Assembly (NCBI GenBank): GCA_964036045.1
Contig: OZ038378.1
Location: 1,240,001 to 1,304,000, forward strand
DNA length: 64,000 nt
Reading direction: 5' to 3'
Source of the DNA: Eutreptiella sp. 'Long Island Sound 2002'
Lineage: Eukaryota > Protista > Euglenida
Part shown: piece after piece, positions 29,171-38,233 of the stretch
Position numbering within the stretch: the stretch's first letter is position 1
Layout: each line of letters starts with the position of its first letter
Position numbers and translations under genes: made by a program
Notes under the pieces: generated by a model
Databases searched by the model: none
Seen by the model: only the letters and a program-made list of their open reading frames with translations
What the model was told of the DNA's origin: nothing

Positions 29171-29722
29171 GCCTCACACACACACACACACACACCCACA
29201 CACACACCCACACACACACACGGCCTCTCTCTCTCTCTCTCACACACACACACGGCCTCGCACACACACACACACACACACACACACACACACACACGGC
29301 CTCGCACACACACACACACACACACACACACACGGCCTCACACACACACACACACACACACACACACGGCCTCTCCCACACACACACGGCTTCACACACA
29401 CACACACACACTCACACACGGCCTCACACACACACACACACACGGCCTCACACCCACGCACACCCACACCCACACCCACACCCACACCAGCACCCACCCA
29501 CCCACACACACACACACACACGGCCTCACACACACACACACACACACACACACACACACACACACGGCCTCACACACACACACACACACACACACACACA
29601 CACACACAAACACACGGCCACACACACACACACAGGGCCTCACACACACACACACACACGGCCACACACACACACACACACACACACGGCCTCACACACA
29701 CACACACACACACACAGACACA
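29171..29722 (+). repeat. (CA)n array punctuated by CGGCCT
   Basis: Direct reading; the compound unit CACACAC-GGCCT recurs between pure CA runs. Confidence 0.97.
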
Positions 29723-30690
29723 CATTTCCCCCGTGGGTCCCGCCCACTTGTCCCTTTGAGGGATCTGAACAAGATGTGTACCACAAACTTAAAGCCTGCT
29801 CTTGGCTTACTGTGCCTGTCCATATCTTGCAAAGTACTTTTGGCCCCGTGTTTAGTGCTTCCGGTCGTGCCCCCACCAGTCGGCTCTGCACTGACTACCC
29901 GCCGTTGTCCCTCACTCGAGCCCCGGGCCTCTTACTTTGGAAAATAGCGCGTGTTGTGGGTCTATCGTTGCGATGTTAGCATCCGGGGCGCAGCCATGAA
30001 TCATTTGGCATTCATGCGGGTGTTGTACTCAGAGGTGTCCAAGTGGCTGGAGATGCCATCTTTGTCCCTCTCGCACGAGGCCATTTGTTTTTCCGTGCTG
30101 TTCAAGGTTGGCTCTCGGATGGCAACATTCCGGTCCTACCTGGCTCGGAGGTAGACAGTGCGAAGCGCCCAGCAGACTCATCCGGGACCCCAAACCCCCA
30201 CATGTTCCGACCGGGCAACGCGGACAAAGTGGGGCAGAAACGGGCCCGTGCAGAACAAGCAGGGAGGGTGGTGGAGGCGATTCATGTGCCTCATGCATAT
30301 ACTGACGGCTCGTATGCAGAGGAAGGGCCGGGGGGGGGGGGTGTTCGCTGGCTATGGAGTGTGGTTTGGCGCCCTTCATCCCCCGAATATATCCTCCCGG
30401 GGCCAGTCCAGACCAATAATAGAGCGGAGCCGACTGCCTGCCTTGAGGCCCTATGGGCGGTCCCATTGTCGCAGCCGTTGCGTATCATTACCGACAGTAA
30501 GTATGTGTATGACGGTGTGACCCTGTACATGCACCGCTGGGCACTACAGGGCCGCCGAGTCACCAACCAGGACCTGTGGGAGTCCCTCAAAGCGGTGCTG
30601 CGGCAGAGACACTCTAGAAGCATGTATACAGTCATGTTGGTATCATTGGTAATGAACGTGCAGATTTGTTAGCGAACCAGGGGCGCCGGC
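29723..30690 (+). mobile_element. 5'-truncated LINE 3' end: zinc-knuckle remnant, W..R motif and C-terminal RNase H
   Basis: [18 protein letters not shown] and LWVYRC, then AYTDGS..QTNNRAE..TDSKYV..NQDLW. After a frameshift near 30610 the sequence reads HVYSHVGIIGNERADLLA, completing the RNase H1 motif set. Confidence 0.85.
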
Positions 30691-31513
30691 GTCACCCAGA
30701 TAGGGTGCGCTATCTCCGAGACCAGCTTGCCCGTTAGGGTCAGCGCCCGGTAGTGTTAGCCTCCTAGACACCTCGCCACTGCGGGTAACTACACATTGCC
30801 CCTGGGTGAAGACCCTTGCCAGCTTTGAACCATTTTTGCGCATTAAGGTACAAGAGGCATGGACGGTATACTGCCAAGCGCCATGGACTGGCAATCGTCG
30901 TCGTCGGGGGTTCGAACCCCCTTTCCGTCCAGGGGCTGTTGGCTGCGCCCCCACCACCGCCCCCACAGCATCTCGCACCACCACCGGCACCACCGGTGGA
31001 TGGGTGGTGTGCCTCTCGTCCTTGTGATATTTTTCCACCGCACAAGGCGTCATATTTTCCACACAAAAACGCCGGGCACCAGCACACCTGTAGCAGTGCG
31101 CCCTATCACCGGCACCGCCGGCGGACGGGAGCCGCATCTCCTCCTCGTATTCCTCCTCGGGGGTTCGAACTGGCATCTTCAAGGCGGCGGCTGGCTGCAC
31201 GGCTGCTGCGGTAAGCGGCCAGAACCTAACCCTGCGGGCGGCCCACTTTGGAAGTGCCACAATATGGTGCTAATCTGCAGCTTGCATGTTTGTTCGTTGC
31301 AGCGTTTCCGCCTTTAACTGGTTCTGCTAGTTCGCTGCGGGATGGAACCAGGGAAACTGTGTGCCGACTTACCCCACACCCCCTCTCCATGGTTGGATGG
31401 CTGGCGGTCCTGAGGACCAGCAGGGGGGGACATGAAAGCTTGCTCATGCCCCCCCTCCCTTGAGTCTATGTGTGGATCACACATTGCTTGTTGGTGAGGT
31501 AACGGTCTGTATC

Positions 31514-31583
31514 GTCTCTGTAGCTGAATGGTATGCGCCGGGTCTCGCATGCCGTAGGCGGTGGTTCGAACCCCGGGGAGGGT
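31514..31583 (+). repeat. tRNA-Ala(CGC)-like SINE head
   Basis: A-box TAGCTGAATGG, loop CTCGCAT, B-box GGTTCGAACC; stems imperfect. Confidence 0.5.
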
Positions 31584-31643
31584 TGGGATGCACTGGGCGG
31601 CAAGGCGGCCCTGCCTTTTGTGCCTGTGAAGCGAGTAAGCTGA

Positions 31644-31716
31644 CCTCTTCAATATGGTACAGTGGCCAGGGCGTTGCACGCCGGCCGGATAGTGCCAGGT
31701 TCGAATCCGGGGGGGC
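31644..31716 (+). repeat. Second tRNA-like head (TGC anticodon-like loop)
   Basis: A-box-like TGGTACAGTGG, TTGCAC loop, B-box GGTTCGAATCC; stems imperfect. Confidence 0.45.
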
Positions 31717-32075
31717 TCGAAATGCGTAGATTTCGTGTTATAGTCTATGACTATCTACATAACATCAAGGTTATTTTTTCTGCAACCATGTGCCTGGCAT
31801 ATGCCCCCCCCTCCCCTTTAGTCTCAAGGGATGCATGGGGCTGGGATGTGGGGAGTGGTAGGGCACACGAGCATGCAATGTGGGTCTTGCTGTCGTGCGG
31901 ATGGTTCTGAGGGCAGGAGCCGTGGTGCGTTGCCGGAAACTGTAAATATGGAGTCTCGTGCCCGCTAGGCAGCCCCGCCTGCAGGGCTGAACAATCGAAC
32001 TCATGGTTTGCAGCAGTGATAGGACTTCAGGATTGTTGAACCTCGCAGATGGAGCGATTCGAATGGATTCCTTGG

Positions 32076-36043: not shown

Positions 36044-36167
36044 CGGTCACTTACGTACACATACACACACACGGCCTCACACACACACACACACACACAC
36101 GGCCTCACACACACACACACACACGGCCTCTCACACACACACACACACACGGCCTCACACACACACA
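36044..36167 (+). repeat. CGGTCACTTACGTAC anchor plus CA/GGCCT array, left of the RT
   Basis: Same anchor and array as at 38101. Confidence 0.95.
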
Positions 36168-37610
36168 CCAATTTTCTACATGCAAGTGAAGACCCACAAG
36201 AGAAAATCCATTCGTGAAAATTCGTGGCCTTCCAGACCGATCACAGCACTCACAAGCTGGTTCACTACCCCCCCATCAATCATTTTGAGCACGTTGGGGA
36301 AAATATTTTTGCGCTTCGATGCTTGGCAAGACGCCAAGAACACTCCCCTCACGGATACACTGGATTTTGTACAGCGCATACACAATTTCAAACATTGGGT
36401 GGATGGGGACCACGATCAGTATGTCCTGACCTCCTTTGATTTCACTGCCCTGTACACAAATTTTACGTTCAGTGATTTGAGCAAAGCGTTCCGCTATTGG
36501 CGCGATGAGTGGAAGAACACATGTCTGAATAATTTTGAGATCACATTACATGAGCGTGCATATGTGCGATGGCTCACTGAGCCGATTGGTGAACGATGGT
36601 TTCGATTCATTGATACCTCATTCCCATTTTTCAATATGCAGTACGATCCCGAGGTTTCCCTGGGTGAGGTTTTCCTGCACCTAATTTTTACTCATAATAT
36701 TTTTAAGGCCCCAGGCAGTGGAATTTACAGGCAGGCCCAGGGCTTCTCCATGGGGACGAATTGCGCCCCAGCCTGGGCTAACCTAGCGCTGCGCTGTTTT
36801 GAACGTCTGGGGCAGAAGGCATTGCCATGCATTTTGCTGAGATTTATCGATGATGGCGCGTGTATTCACCACCGCGCCCATACGCCGCAGATCACTGCAA
36901 TGCTTTCCTCTTGGTACCCCCCACACCTGCCTTTTGAGGTTTTGGCTCTGGGTGTGTCAGCGGATATCATTTTCCTGGACCTACATGTCCTGGACCTGCA
37001 TGAACCGAGGTACTGTACCCATTTCAAGCCTACAAACAGTGCCACATACATCCCCTGGTCCAGCAATACCCCCCGAGGTACAAAACTCGGGTGGAGACGG
37101 GGGGAGGGGGTACGTTTCCTTCGTACTAACTCCCATGAACGATATTTCCTGGCGGCCGTAAAGAGGATGAATGGGGCCTGCCGCAGGCTAGGGTACCCCA
37201 AAACGCTCTGCAGTTCCTTGCCTGTGAGTTGGTCTGAGAAGGACAGATACATGACACGAAATTCCAAAACAAAGGGTAGGAGGGTGGGTAGTTTTTTGGA
37301 ATTTTTTCGCATCCATGTGTGGAGAGTGCCATATGAGGCGTGTATTCCCCTGAAGTATGGAGATCCAATTCACAGACTGAACCAACAGATCAAACAATCA
37401 ATTCCTGGGACCAAACTGTTTGCAGTCAACCGTCCACAGCCAAATCTCAGGAAGCGCTGGCACAGAGCGCTGGTAAAAACCCTGAATGATCTGGGGAATG
37501 TCCAGCCAGCTGCAGACAGTTTGTCTATGGATGCCAGCCTGTTGTTGAATTGCAGGGCAGCAGCTGAAAATGGCAACTGCAGCCAGAGTAAGCGCCGCCG
37601 CGTCGCCTGA
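36168..37610 (+). mobile_element. Penelope-like element reverse transcriptase, 5'-truncated, open frame, no endonuclease in this copy
   Basis: PIFYMQVKTHK (motif 1), RPI, FDFTALYTN, QGFSMGTNCAP, RFIDD, FLDL, KPTNSATYIPWSSNTP..GE..R thumb, PQPNLR. The frame begins directly at the CA array, and no GIY-YIG follows the RT. Confidence 0.92.
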
Positions 37611-37820
37611 ACAGGTCGCGCACACTGCCAAAATATCATGTGTTTTGAATATTTGTGAATGCAATTCCTGCGCCATGCACATGTATTTTCAGTGAAGTCA
37701 GTGAACCAGATGTATAATACACCAGATGGAACACGCCAGTAAAATGACGGATGTCTGCATGTGTGATACACGCACTGATGTGAGATAAAGAATGTCTTTT
37801 TGAATATCCTGTGTTATCTC

Positions 37821-37867
37821 ACGCTCAGACTGAGGAGGGCCTAGTGTTGGGCCGCAACCGGTCTCGT
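37821..37867 (+). ncRNA. Degenerate type I hammerhead-ribozyme-like motif
   Basis: CTGAGGA(G), stem GGCCTA-GTGT-TGGGCC, GCAA, CCGGTC. Deviates from CUGANGA..GAAACCGGUC by A>C in GAAA and one extra G; stem I weak. Confidence 0.45.
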
Positions 37868-37994
37868 TTTTTGGCTTTGTTTGTGGACGCTTGCATGTGA
37901 GCCGTGTGTGAAGTAGCCCGTGACCACCGCTGATTTTCTGATTGAGGACCCCTTCTCAGGATTTTCCGGCGAGGACAAGCTCAAAGCTCATCCC

Positions 37995-38100
37995 AAAAAA
38001 TTCCAAAAAAATTCCAAAAAATTCCAAAAAAAATTCCAAAAAAAAATTCCAAAAAATTCCAAAAAATTCCAAAAAAAAAATTCCAAAAAAATTCCAAAAT
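37995..38100 (+). repeat. (AAAAAATTCC)n satellite
   Basis: About ten units with variable A-runs. Confidence 0.97.
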
Positions 38101-38233
38101 CGGTCACTTACGTACACACACACACACACGGCCTCACACACACACACACACACACGGCCTCACACACACACACACACACACACGGCCTCACACACAAACA
38201 CACACACACGGCCTCACACACACACACACACAC
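38101..38233 (+). repeat. CGGTCACTTACGTAC anchor plus CA/GGCCT array, right of the RT
   Basis: Direct repeat of 36044-36167. Confidence 0.95.

What the first reader, a model, noticed from the sequence alone, without database searches (positions are those of the whole stretch)
29171..38233. Terminon-like chain: Penelope-like RT and passenger modules joined by (CA)n-GGCCT arrays
Seen: five arrays of one compound satellite, each followed by a module (LINE end, U, U+V, RT, 2-kb repeat). Two arrays start with the identical anchor CGGTCACTTACGTAC, so the satellite behaves as an element tail. The RT frame is uninterrupted but cut at motif 1. Known: Athena/Terminon PLEs form head-to-tail chains joined by telomeric repeats, and Naiad/Chlamys PLEs have an N-terminal GIY-YIG and microsatellite association. 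Inference: a PLE system that uses or makes a non-telomeric repeat as its docking site and chains unrelated sequences.
Basis: partly seen in the sequence, partly recalled or inferred. Interest (0 to 1): 0.8.

Follow-up and report, generated by a model that had tools for sequence, protein, structure and literature searches.

The report
Truncated Penelope-like retroelement beside duplicated microsatellite
A young, broken copy of an endonuclease-less Penelope-like jumping gene of a euglenid alga landed next to an unusual CA-rich repeat that local duplications have multiplied; the repeat is neither made nor regularly used by the element, so the "chain" is mostly ordinary genome wear.

Summary
There are five (CA)n-GGCCT arrays, all on the + strand, two identical 15-nt anchors, and an open RT frame cut just before motif 1.

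The Terminon-like reading does not hold. The five arrays reduce to two ancestral ones:
- Arrays 1+2 and array 3 are paralogues inside a tandem segmental duplication of host DNA. X carries a conserved host-gene exon. Arrays 1 and 2 are one array split by a 2.35-kb insert that carries an RNase H domain.
- Arrays 4 and 5, each with its anchor, are a ~125-bp direct repeat around the RT copy. This is most simply a long target-site duplication.

The RT is a 5'-truncated copy (positions 1792-3633 of a 3.63-kb element) of a young Penelope-like family. The family has at least 76 protein fragments in one 90% cluster, including an intact 756-aa RT ORF. It has no GIY-YIG endonuclease, no hammerhead and no telomeric repeats.

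The family's own tail is (AATTCCAAAAA)n. At 21 other 3' ends in eight other loci, none shows the anchor or a CA array. Elsewhere the family does form pseudo-LTRs and head-to-tail chains, but these are joined by its own tail.

One residual oddity: a tail-only footprint sits at the left edge of array 3.

The parts
27532..29170 (+). X: first copy of the duplicated host segment, with a 195-aa ORF at 27664-28251
   Evidence: Matches 32651-34292. The X ORF cluster holds only X and X'.
29171..29724 (+). Array 1: left part of a split (CA)n-GGCCT array
   Evidence: Aligns with array 3 as part of the 27532-29724 = 32651-34857 block.
29725..32075 (+). 2.35-kb insert that splits the array. It holds an RNase H ORF (30043-30672) and tRNA-like B-box motifs. 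Probably the 3' part of a non-LTR element plus other sequence.
   Evidence: PF00075 at E 1e-15. Absent from the paralogous array 3. Sub-threshold tRNA match at 30862-30930. The LINE assignment itself was not tested.
32076..32149 (+). Array 2: right end of the same split array
   Evidence: 32076-32637 = 34840-35405 at 96%, so it equals the last unit of array 3 plus U.
32150..32650 (+). U: unique sequence with a 21-bp minisatellite; end of the first duplication unit
32651..34292 (+). X': second copy of the duplicated host segment. The exon-like core 32993-33348 is conserved in paralogues.
   Evidence: L014/L015 are 87% identical over 356 bp only, among TSP1/SRCR exons.
34293..34313 (+). Tail-only footprint CCAAAAATTCCAAAAATTTGG at the left edge of array 3, absent at the paralogous edge of array 1
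   Evidence: Within the window the 16-mer occurs only here and in the element's tail; 0 expected by chance.
34314..34917 (+). Array 3: the unsplit paralogue of arrays 1+2, with a 132-bp higher-order period
34918..35470 (+). U': second copy of U
35471..36043 (+). V: single-copy sequence between U' and the anchor
   Evidence: The 235-aa U'/V ORF has no relative in 5.8 billion proteins.
36044..36168 (+). Left copy of the ~125-bp direct repeat: anchor plus array 4 (four GGCCT units)
36168..38009 (+). 5'-truncated copy of the endonuclease-less Penelope-like element (full-length positions 1792-3633), with open RT frame 36180-37610
   Evidence: 99.4% identical to L001:6421-8262. Full-length reference is L002:3630-7262. 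Equals residues 281-756 of the intact 756-aa ORF.
37991..38099 (+). The element's own microsatellite tail, (AATTCCAAAAA)n, about 10 units; the longest seen
38101..38233 (+). Right copy of the direct repeat: anchor plus array 5 (four GGCCT units)
38234..43554 (+). 2010-bp tandem repeat with 27-bp subrepeats. This is downstream flank, not part of the element.

Best explanation
The region is host DNA of a euglenid alga that held two arrays of a compound microsatellite, CA runs interrupted by GGCCT. It lies inside or beside a gene for a multi-domain surface-type protein. Three ordinary processes produced the picture.

(1) Tandem segmental duplication. The unit X-array-U was duplicated, with the breakpoint in U's 21-bp minisatellite, giving two paralogous arrays. 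(Shown.)

(2) Array splitting. In the first paralogue a 2.35-kb RNase H-bearing retroelement fragment sits inside the array and splits it into arrays 1 and 2. (The split is shown. Whether it arose by insertion after the duplication, or by loss from the other copy, is inferred.)

(3) PLE insertion. A 5'-truncated cDNA of a young, endonuclease-less Penelope-like element integrated at the left edge of the second array. Its tail joined 1 nt before the anchor. Its truncated 5' end joined inside the last CA run with 1-3 nt of microhomology. The anchor plus the whole 110-nt array was duplicated as a ~125-bp target-site duplication. (The structure is shown; the mechanism is inferred.)

The element primes reverse transcription from its own (AATTCCAAAAA)n tail. 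It encodes no nuclease, so it most likely uses pre-existing 3'-OH ends at breaks or nicks. This is suggested by three features of other copies: no short target duplications, inverted tail pieces at some 5' junctions (a twin-priming-like signature), and repeated insertion into existing tails, which builds head-to-tail chains and pseudo-LTRs. (Inferred.)

The CA/GGCCT repeat is a target or bystander here, not a product or obligatory partner of the RT.
For: Duplication blocks and their identities. Breakpoint.

Direct repeat around the RT copy: both copies have the anchor plus four units. They differ by 3 substitutions and small CA-length changes. That is compatible with the copy's ~0.5% private divergence.

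Family features:
- P0001's 90% cluster has 76 members.
- The full-length element is 3633 bp, with ORF1 and the RT ORF in overlapping frames.
- An intact 756-aa RT ORF exists.
- No GIY-YIG.
- No hammerhead.

Tail (AATTCCAAAAA)n at 21 other 3' ends, with no anchor, array or TTAGGG.

Chains and pseudo-LTRs:
- L004 has three adjacent copies.
- L013 has p-p-FL-p-p-p joined by tails.
- A 716-bp pseudo-LTR occurs in L002, L004, L011 and L012.

Inverted tail at 5' junctions in L003 and L005. No short TSDs.

No (CA)>=8 run in 86.6 kb of other family loci or in L014-L016, and no further array in the rest of the window.

X is exon-like and low-copy; U'/V is unique.

A very long TSD has precedent for a retroelement: rotifer R9, cited in the reference list of PMC8557442.
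Against: - No other copy of the family shows a long target duplication, so the ~125-bp repeat is a one-off for this family.
- Its 3 substitutions are slightly more than expected for so young a copy (about 1.3 expected).
- A second trace of the element's tail motif sits exactly at the edge of array 3. Pure coincidence explains this poorly, and it hints at some affinity for array edges.
- The direction of event (2), insertion versus deletion between arrays, cannot be told.
- Absence of a nuclease rests on Pfam and profile scans of the family's two ORFs.
- No read-level or RNA evidence could be obtained.
Confidence: 0.7

Rival explanations
1. One reading: a Penelope-like system that makes, or docks onto, the (CA)n-GGCCT repeat as a telomere-repeat substitute and so chains unrelated modules, Terminon-like.
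For: - The RT is PLE-type and lacks an endonuclease.
- All arrays are in the RT's sense orientation.
- Two arrays start with the same anchor.
Against: - 0 of 21 other 3' ends carry the anchor or an array, although all carry the 3'-UTR motif.
- The motif would template GGCTC, not the GGCCTC seen in 30 of 35 units.
- Unit length varies from 18 to 78 bp.
- X, U and V are host or unique DNA.
- The five arrays derive from two.
- The locus is in a contig interior with no telomeric repeats.
Confidence: 0.05
2. A weak docking model: the compound microsatellite is a break-prone site whose edges are preferentially captured by the nuclease-less PLE and by other retroelements. On this view the association is real but facultative.
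For: - Three retroelement-related events occurred in or at about 1.4 kb of array within a young duplication: the RNase H insert, the tail-only footprint at 34293-34313, and the RT copy at 36168-38099.
- The two PLE traces (the tail-only footprint and the RT copy) lie at the upstream edge of an array in the same orientation.
- Arrays are otherwise absent from about 180 kb sampled.
- Microsatellite insertion bias, including (CA)n, is reported for Chlamys PLEs (PMC8557442).
Against: - The window was chosen because it shows this association (ascertainment).
- Only one full insertion and one 15-20-nt footprint support it.
- The footprint could be filler DNA of another origin.
- No other family copy lies near any CA run.
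Confidence: 0.2
3. The anchor+array repeats flanking the RT copy are not a target-site duplication. They are either a pre-existing tandem duplication or the result of recombination or repair synthesis that copied the flank.
For: - The two copies differ by 3 substitutions plus length changes, somewhat more than expected.
- Tandem duplication is clearly active in this region.
- Other family copies show no TSD.
Against: It needs the element to have landed exactly at the junction of two units. The tail joins 1 nt before the anchor, and the repeat ends where the element begins. That is the geometry a staggered break predicts.
Confidence: 0.15

Closest known systems
Endonuclease-deficient Penelope-like elements (Athena, Coprina; Gladyshev and Arkhipova 2007, as summarised in PMC8557442)
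   Same: - PLE-type RT with N-terminal motifs and thumb.
- No GIY-YIG domain.
- An upstream ORF1 in another frame.
- Frequent 5' truncation.
- Head-to-tail chains.
   Different: - No reverse-complement telomeric repeats at the 3' end; instead an 11-nt A-rich microsatellite tail.
- No hammerhead motif.
- Copies lie at least 100 kb inside 0.7-3 Mb contigs rather than at chromosome ends.
- The host is a euglenid.
Terminons (giant Athena-based composite elements at rotifer telomeres)
   Same: An EN-less PLE RT, with chains of units in one orientation.
   Different: - The unit is 3.6 kb with two ORFs, not tens of kb with many ORFs.
- The joiner is the element's own tail, not telomeric repeats.
- The location is interstitial.
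- The neighbouring modules in the window are host DNA.
Chlamys / Naiad PLEs and their EN-less PLE-X derivatives (Craig et al. 2021, PMC8557442)
   Same: - About 40 extra residues between RT motifs A and B, the IFD position.
- DK followed by a non-G residue (DKD).
- No canonical hammerhead.
- Pseudo-LTRs and tandem or inverted insertions.
- One copy beside a (CA)n-type repeat.
   Different: - No N-terminal GIY-YIG or CxC domain.
- No general microsatellite bias: 0 of about 20 other ends.
- Clade membership could not be tested for lack of reference sequences.
Retroelements with very long target-site duplications (rotifer R9; cited in PMC8557442)
   Same: A direct repeat of about 125 bp of target flanks a single insertion.
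   Different: R9 is an rDNA-specific non-LTR element with a nuclease and a constant TSD. Here the long repeat is seen at one copy only.
Endonuclease-independent and twin-priming LINE-1 insertion (own knowledge: Morrish et al. 2002; Ostertag and Kazazian 2001)
   Same: 5' truncation, missing TSDs, inverted tail-derived sequence at the 5' junction, and use of pre-existing DNA ends.
   Different: A different RT class. The tail is an 11-nt repeat rather than poly(A). The mechanism here is inferred from junctions only.

Membership tests
Penelope-like elements (PLE) | RT with PLE-specific N-terminal motifs (GxKF/Y, DKG-like), core motifs and a KPT..Y thumb, collinear with a bona fide PLE | tested here: met
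   P0066, a 44%-identical relative, aligns with P0045 (RT plus C-terminal GIY-YIG) over 487 aa at E 9e-12. The motifs are visible in the intact 756-aa ORF. Pfam RVT_1 is only weak, at E 0.003-0.007.
Penelope-like elements (PLE) | Pseudo-LTRs from partial tandems, inverted copies, frequent 5' truncation | tested here: met
   A 716-bp partial copy directly precedes the full-length copy in L002, L004, L011 and L012. L004 and L005 hold inverted copies. There are many truncated copies.
Penelope-like elements (PLE) | GIY-YIG endonuclease (C- or N-terminal) in EN+ clades | tested here: not met
   No PF01541 hit in ORF1 or the RT ORF. A jackhmmer profile built from P0045's EN found it in only 9 canonical relatives, none in this clade. 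The family is therefore EN-less.
Penelope-like elements (PLE) | Hammerhead ribozyme motif near the 3' end or in the pseudo-LTR (absent in Naiad and most Chlamys) | tested here: not met
   Rfam found nothing at gathering score on the window, nor at E<=1 on L002:2800-7400 and window 34920-38110.
EN-deficient PLEs (Athena/Coprina) | Short reverse-complement telomeric repeats at the 3' end | tested here: not met
   All 22 3' ends finish in (AATTCCAAAAA)n. No (TTAGGG)2 or (CCCTAA)2 occurs in any family locus. Earlier notes give TTAGGG-type telomere repeats for this genome.
EN-deficient PLEs (Athena/Coprina) | Location at or near chromosome ends | tested here: not met
   All nine loci lie 100 kb or more from the ends of 0.7-3.0 Mb contigs. 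Contig ends are not proven chromosome ends, so this shows interstitial copies exist, not that telomeric ones are absent.
Terminons | Giant composite units (tens of kb, many ORFs) built on Athena RT, joined by telomeric repeats at telomeres | tested here: not met
   The unit is 3633 bp with two ORFs. Joiners are the element's own tail. Modules X, U and V are host or unique DNA.
Chlamys/Naiad (N-terminal EN+ PLEs) | N-terminal GIY-YIG linked to the RT by a CxC domain | tested here: not met
   The N-terminus of the intact ORF and ORF1 show neither. Long relatives lack it too.
Chlamys/Naiad (N-terminal EN+ PLEs) | IFD-like insertion between RT motifs A and B | tested here: met
   There are about 100 residues between FDFTALYTN and QGFSMG, against about 55 in canonical P0045. 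The alignment gap is about 40 aa.
Chlamys/Naiad (N-terminal EN+ PLEs) | Insertion bias for microsatellites such as (CA)n and (C)n | tested here: not met
   Only the window copy lies at a CA-type array. There is no (CA)>=8 run in 86.6 kb around about 20 other copies.
Chlamys/Naiad, Athena, Coprina (clade assignment) | Placement in an RT phylogeny with named reference elements and TERT | not testable with these tools
   No labelled reference sequences were available. In a tree of 60 unlabelled relatives the family sits in an EN-less assemblage, apart from the C-terminal EN+ PLEs.

The most novel reading that the evidence does not exclude
The family is an endonuclease-less Penelope-like lineage that has left the telomeres. 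It spreads inside chromosomes by annealing its 11-nt microsatellite tail to exposed 3' ends, including nicks in its own earlier tails, which would build the chains. Break-prone compound CA/GGCCT arrays would then be preferred entry points. Two independent tail junctions at array edges in this window would be the first trace of that preference.
Probability: 0.25. Interest if true: 0.55.

Novelty: new variant of a known kind. Interest (0 to 1): 0.3.

Why it matters
For the finding as stated, the result is deflationary. There is no telomerase-like repeat synthesis and no Terminon-like capture of passengers. The striking array pattern comes from duplication plus two insertions into a microsatellite.

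What remains of interest is the element family itself. It is a young PLE in a euglenid, apparently still intact, with no nuclease, no hammerhead and no telomeric repeats. It nevertheless has many interstitial copies and chains joined by its own tail.

EN-less PLEs are described as generally confined to chromosome ends (PMC8557442). A lineage that proliferates internally would therefore help show how PLE reverse transcriptases obtain primers without a nuclease. My paper search found no report of PLEs in Euglena, though earlier notes of this scan already record other PLE families in this genome.

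Tried and rejected
No depth, junction or RNA evidence was obtained.
- A metagenome scan for the anchor plus ACA gave 4 chance hits, none followed by an array.
- Rfam and ARAGORN found no hammerhead and no tRNA gene.
- phmmer against the PDB found nothing for the RT.
- The local Pfam did not reproduce the precomputed PF26215/PF28514 hits.
- The listing of cluster members on minus-strand ORFs of the 2-kb repeat failed because I included the stop codon.
- Cluster look-ups gave no taxon names for the nearest relatives.
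- The first tree run timed out; a smaller one worked.
- The Atlas search for the X ORF gave nothing usable.
- Considered and rejected: U+V as a TIR transposon (only 8-nt inverted matches at unequal offsets), and the 3'-UTR motif as a template for the satellite.

Full report
**1. The observation**

The sequence is as described. CA runs interrupted by GGCCT form five arrays at 29171-29724, 32076-32149, 34314-34917, 36057-36168 and 38114-38233. The 18-nt core of the motif matches 35 times at up to one mismatch. All matches are on the + strand and inside these arrays, against none in shuffles. The 15-nt anchor occurs exactly twice, at 36044 and 38101, each time directly before an array. The frame 36180-37610 is open for 476 aa and begins at the motif-1 block. 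An RNase H domain (PF00075, E 1e-15) lies after array 1.

**2. The five arrays are not five events**

Self-comparison shows three pairs of duplicated blocks:
- 27532-29724 equals 32651-34857 (93% including the array; about 99% in the unique part).
- 32076-32637 equals 34840-35405 (96%).
- 36044-36168 equals 38101-38227 (93%).

So X-array-U is tandemly duplicated as [X-array-U][X'-array-U'], with the junction in U's 21-bp minisatellite. Arrays 1 and 2 together are the paralogue of array 3, split by 2351 bp that array 3 lacks. Arrays 4 and 5, each with the anchor and four GGCCT units, are copies of one another that flank the RT copy. Two ancestral arrays suffice.

GGCCT spacing varies from 18 to 78 bp, and array 3 has a 132-bp higher-order period. 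That is the behaviour of a compound micro/minisatellite evolving by slippage and unequal exchange, not of fixed-template addition.

**3. The modules are host DNA**

- The X ORF's 90% cluster holds only X and X'. The RNase H ORF and the U'/V ORF are singletons.
- A sensitive search finds only two further relatives of the X ORF and none of the U'/V ORF.
- The paralogues share only 356 bp with X (window 32993-33348). One lies among exons with TSP1 and SRCR domains in another tandemly duplicated region; the other lies in a third contig. Neither has CA arrays or the element's tail motif nearby.

X therefore looks like an exon with its flanking intron of a multi-domain host gene family, not a passenger.

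**4. The RT element**

The 476-aa ORF is 100% identical to part of P0001, whose 90% cluster has 76 members, all from ENA assembly ERZ25074135. Earlier notes of this scan call this genome a Euglena-type alga. I fetched eight other loci. They define the following:

- A full-length unit of 3633 bp (L002:3630-7262) with ORF1 of about 290-320 aa and an RT ORF in an overlapping frame. One copy (L004) keeps an intact 756-aa RT ORF. Some copies are 99.95-100% identical to each other.
- The window copy corresponds to positions 1792-3633 and is 99.4% identical to L001.
- The protein has the PLE N-terminal motifs and thumb. A relative aligns collinearly with a GIY-YIG-bearing PLE (E 9e-12), apart from about 40 extra residues between motifs A and B.
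- Pfam or a GIY-YIG profile finds no nuclease domain in either ORF. The same holds for the family's relatives, except nine canonical C-terminal EN+ PLEs.
- No hammerhead is found.
- In a tree of 60 relatives the family and some unnamed relatives form a clade within EN-less PLE-type RTs, apart from the EN+ group.

**5. The family's real tail and chains**

Every 3' end finishes in ...CATCCCAAAAAATTCCAAAAA followed by 0 to about 10 further AATTCCAAAAA units. Tail length is 19-109 nt, and the window's is the longest. None of the 21 other ends is followed by the anchor or by a CA run. None of the eight loci (86.6 kb) contains any (CA)>=8 run or telomeric repeat.

The family does chain, but through its own tail:
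- L004 has three adjacent 5'-truncated copies.
- L013 has two partial copies, a full-length one and three more partial copies, joined by tails.
- Four loci have a 716-bp partial copy directly before the full-length copy, a pseudo-LTR. It starts at an internal motif that is the reverse complement of the tail.
- Some 5' junctions carry inverted tail pieces (L003, L005).
- I found no short target duplications.

All loci are at least 100 kb inside 0.7-3 Mb contigs. The window is at 730-751 kb of a 1.45-Mb contig.

**6. Reading of the window copy**

The tail ends 1 nt before the right anchor. The truncated 5' end joins the last CA run of the left array with 1-3 nt of microhomology. The anchor plus array is present on both sides. 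This is the geometry of a target-site duplication of about 125 bp.

The two copies differ by three substitutions and small CA-length changes. From the copy's own divergence, about 1.3 substitutions would be expected, so this is compatible. A similarly long duplication is on record for rotifer R9 (reference list of PMC8557442). The mechanism is inferred. A pre-existing tandem duplication is the main alternative.

**7. A residual oddity**

At the left edge of array 3 (34293-34313) there is a 21-nt stretch identical in type to the element's tail. The paralogous edge of array 1 lacks it. Within the window the 16-mer occurs only there and in the element's tail, with none expected by chance.

This may be a tail-only abortive insertion. 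If so, two independent events of this family lie at upstream edges of CA/GGCCT arrays. That keeps alive a weak, facultative 'break-prone array as entry site' idea. Microsatellite bias, including (CA)n, is known for Chlamys PLEs (PMC8557442). But ascertainment bias and the lack of any CA association at other copies argue for caution.

**8. The template idea**

It would also specify GGCTC rather than the GGCCTC found in 30 of 35 units. I reject it.

**9. Limits**

There is therefore no depth, empty-site or RNA evidence.
- Run metadata only hint at expression: four metatranscriptomic runs hold 20-32% of the sampled words.
- The RNase H insert's class and tail were not determined.
- Clade assignment among named PLE groups needs reference sequences.
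- My paper search found no report of PLEs in Euglena.

**10. Verdict**

The PLE identification is supported. The Terminon-like docking and repeat-making interpretation is not supported. The window shows ordinary processes acting on a microsatellite. The element family itself is a modestly interesting EN-less, interstitial, self-tail-chaining PLE variant.

Noticed in passing
L004:1-3485 (minus strand) and L002:2912-7277: An intact copy of the PLE family: 756-aa RT ORF, with ORF1 overlapping it in another frame by about 330 nt (possible programmed frameshift). A 716-bp pseudo-LTR begins at an internal motif that is the reverse complement of the tail.
   Followed up: partly
window 32993-33348 (and 27874-28229); L014/L015:7088-7443; L016:7154-7497: An exon-like 356-bp stretch inside X is conserved in paralogues. 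L014/L015 lie among TSP1 and SRCR exons in another tandemly duplicated region; L016 is in a third contig. The encoded roughly 110-aa domain has no Pfam match.
   Followed up: partly
window 30860-31720: Four tRNA-like B-box motifs (GGTTCGAA) in the 2.35-kb insert, plus a sub-threshold Rfam tRNA match at 30862-30930. Possibly tRNA-derived SINE pieces downstream of the RNase H fragment.
   Followed up: no
window 32470-32647 and 35243-35471: The 21-bp minisatellite in U and U' has different copy numbers (8.5 versus 10.9). The segmental duplication breakpoint lies in it.
   Followed up: partly
window 38234-43554: A 2010-bp tandem repeat (97% between units) containing 27-bp and 75-bp subrepeats that read as Pro/Thr/Ala-rich peptide on the + strand. 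Its nature is unknown.
   Followed up: no
L001:3830-4090 and 5280-5550; L012:7266-7340 and 2230-2316/6440-6526: PLE copies in two different contigs abut the same other G-rich repeat family (with a CACCACCACC...CTCTACAACATC motif). This suggests repeated nesting or co-mobilisation.
   Followed up: no
L001:8441-11382 (minus strand): A DIRS-like element (Phage_integrase plus RVT_1 ORFs) lies immediately downstream of a PLE copy.
   Followed up: no
window 18220-18687 and 19687-20337: Two long arrays of a 13-nt repeat (TGGCTCTCCCCCT), with short (TTAGGG)2-type hexamer pairs nearby at 20345 and 21477.
   Followed up: no
one search run list: The 3.4-kb stretch is partly held by estuary metagenomes and four metatranscriptomic RNA runs, as well as by runs of four coded organisms. 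The family, or close relatives, therefore occurs in environmental samples and may be transcribed.
   Followed up: no
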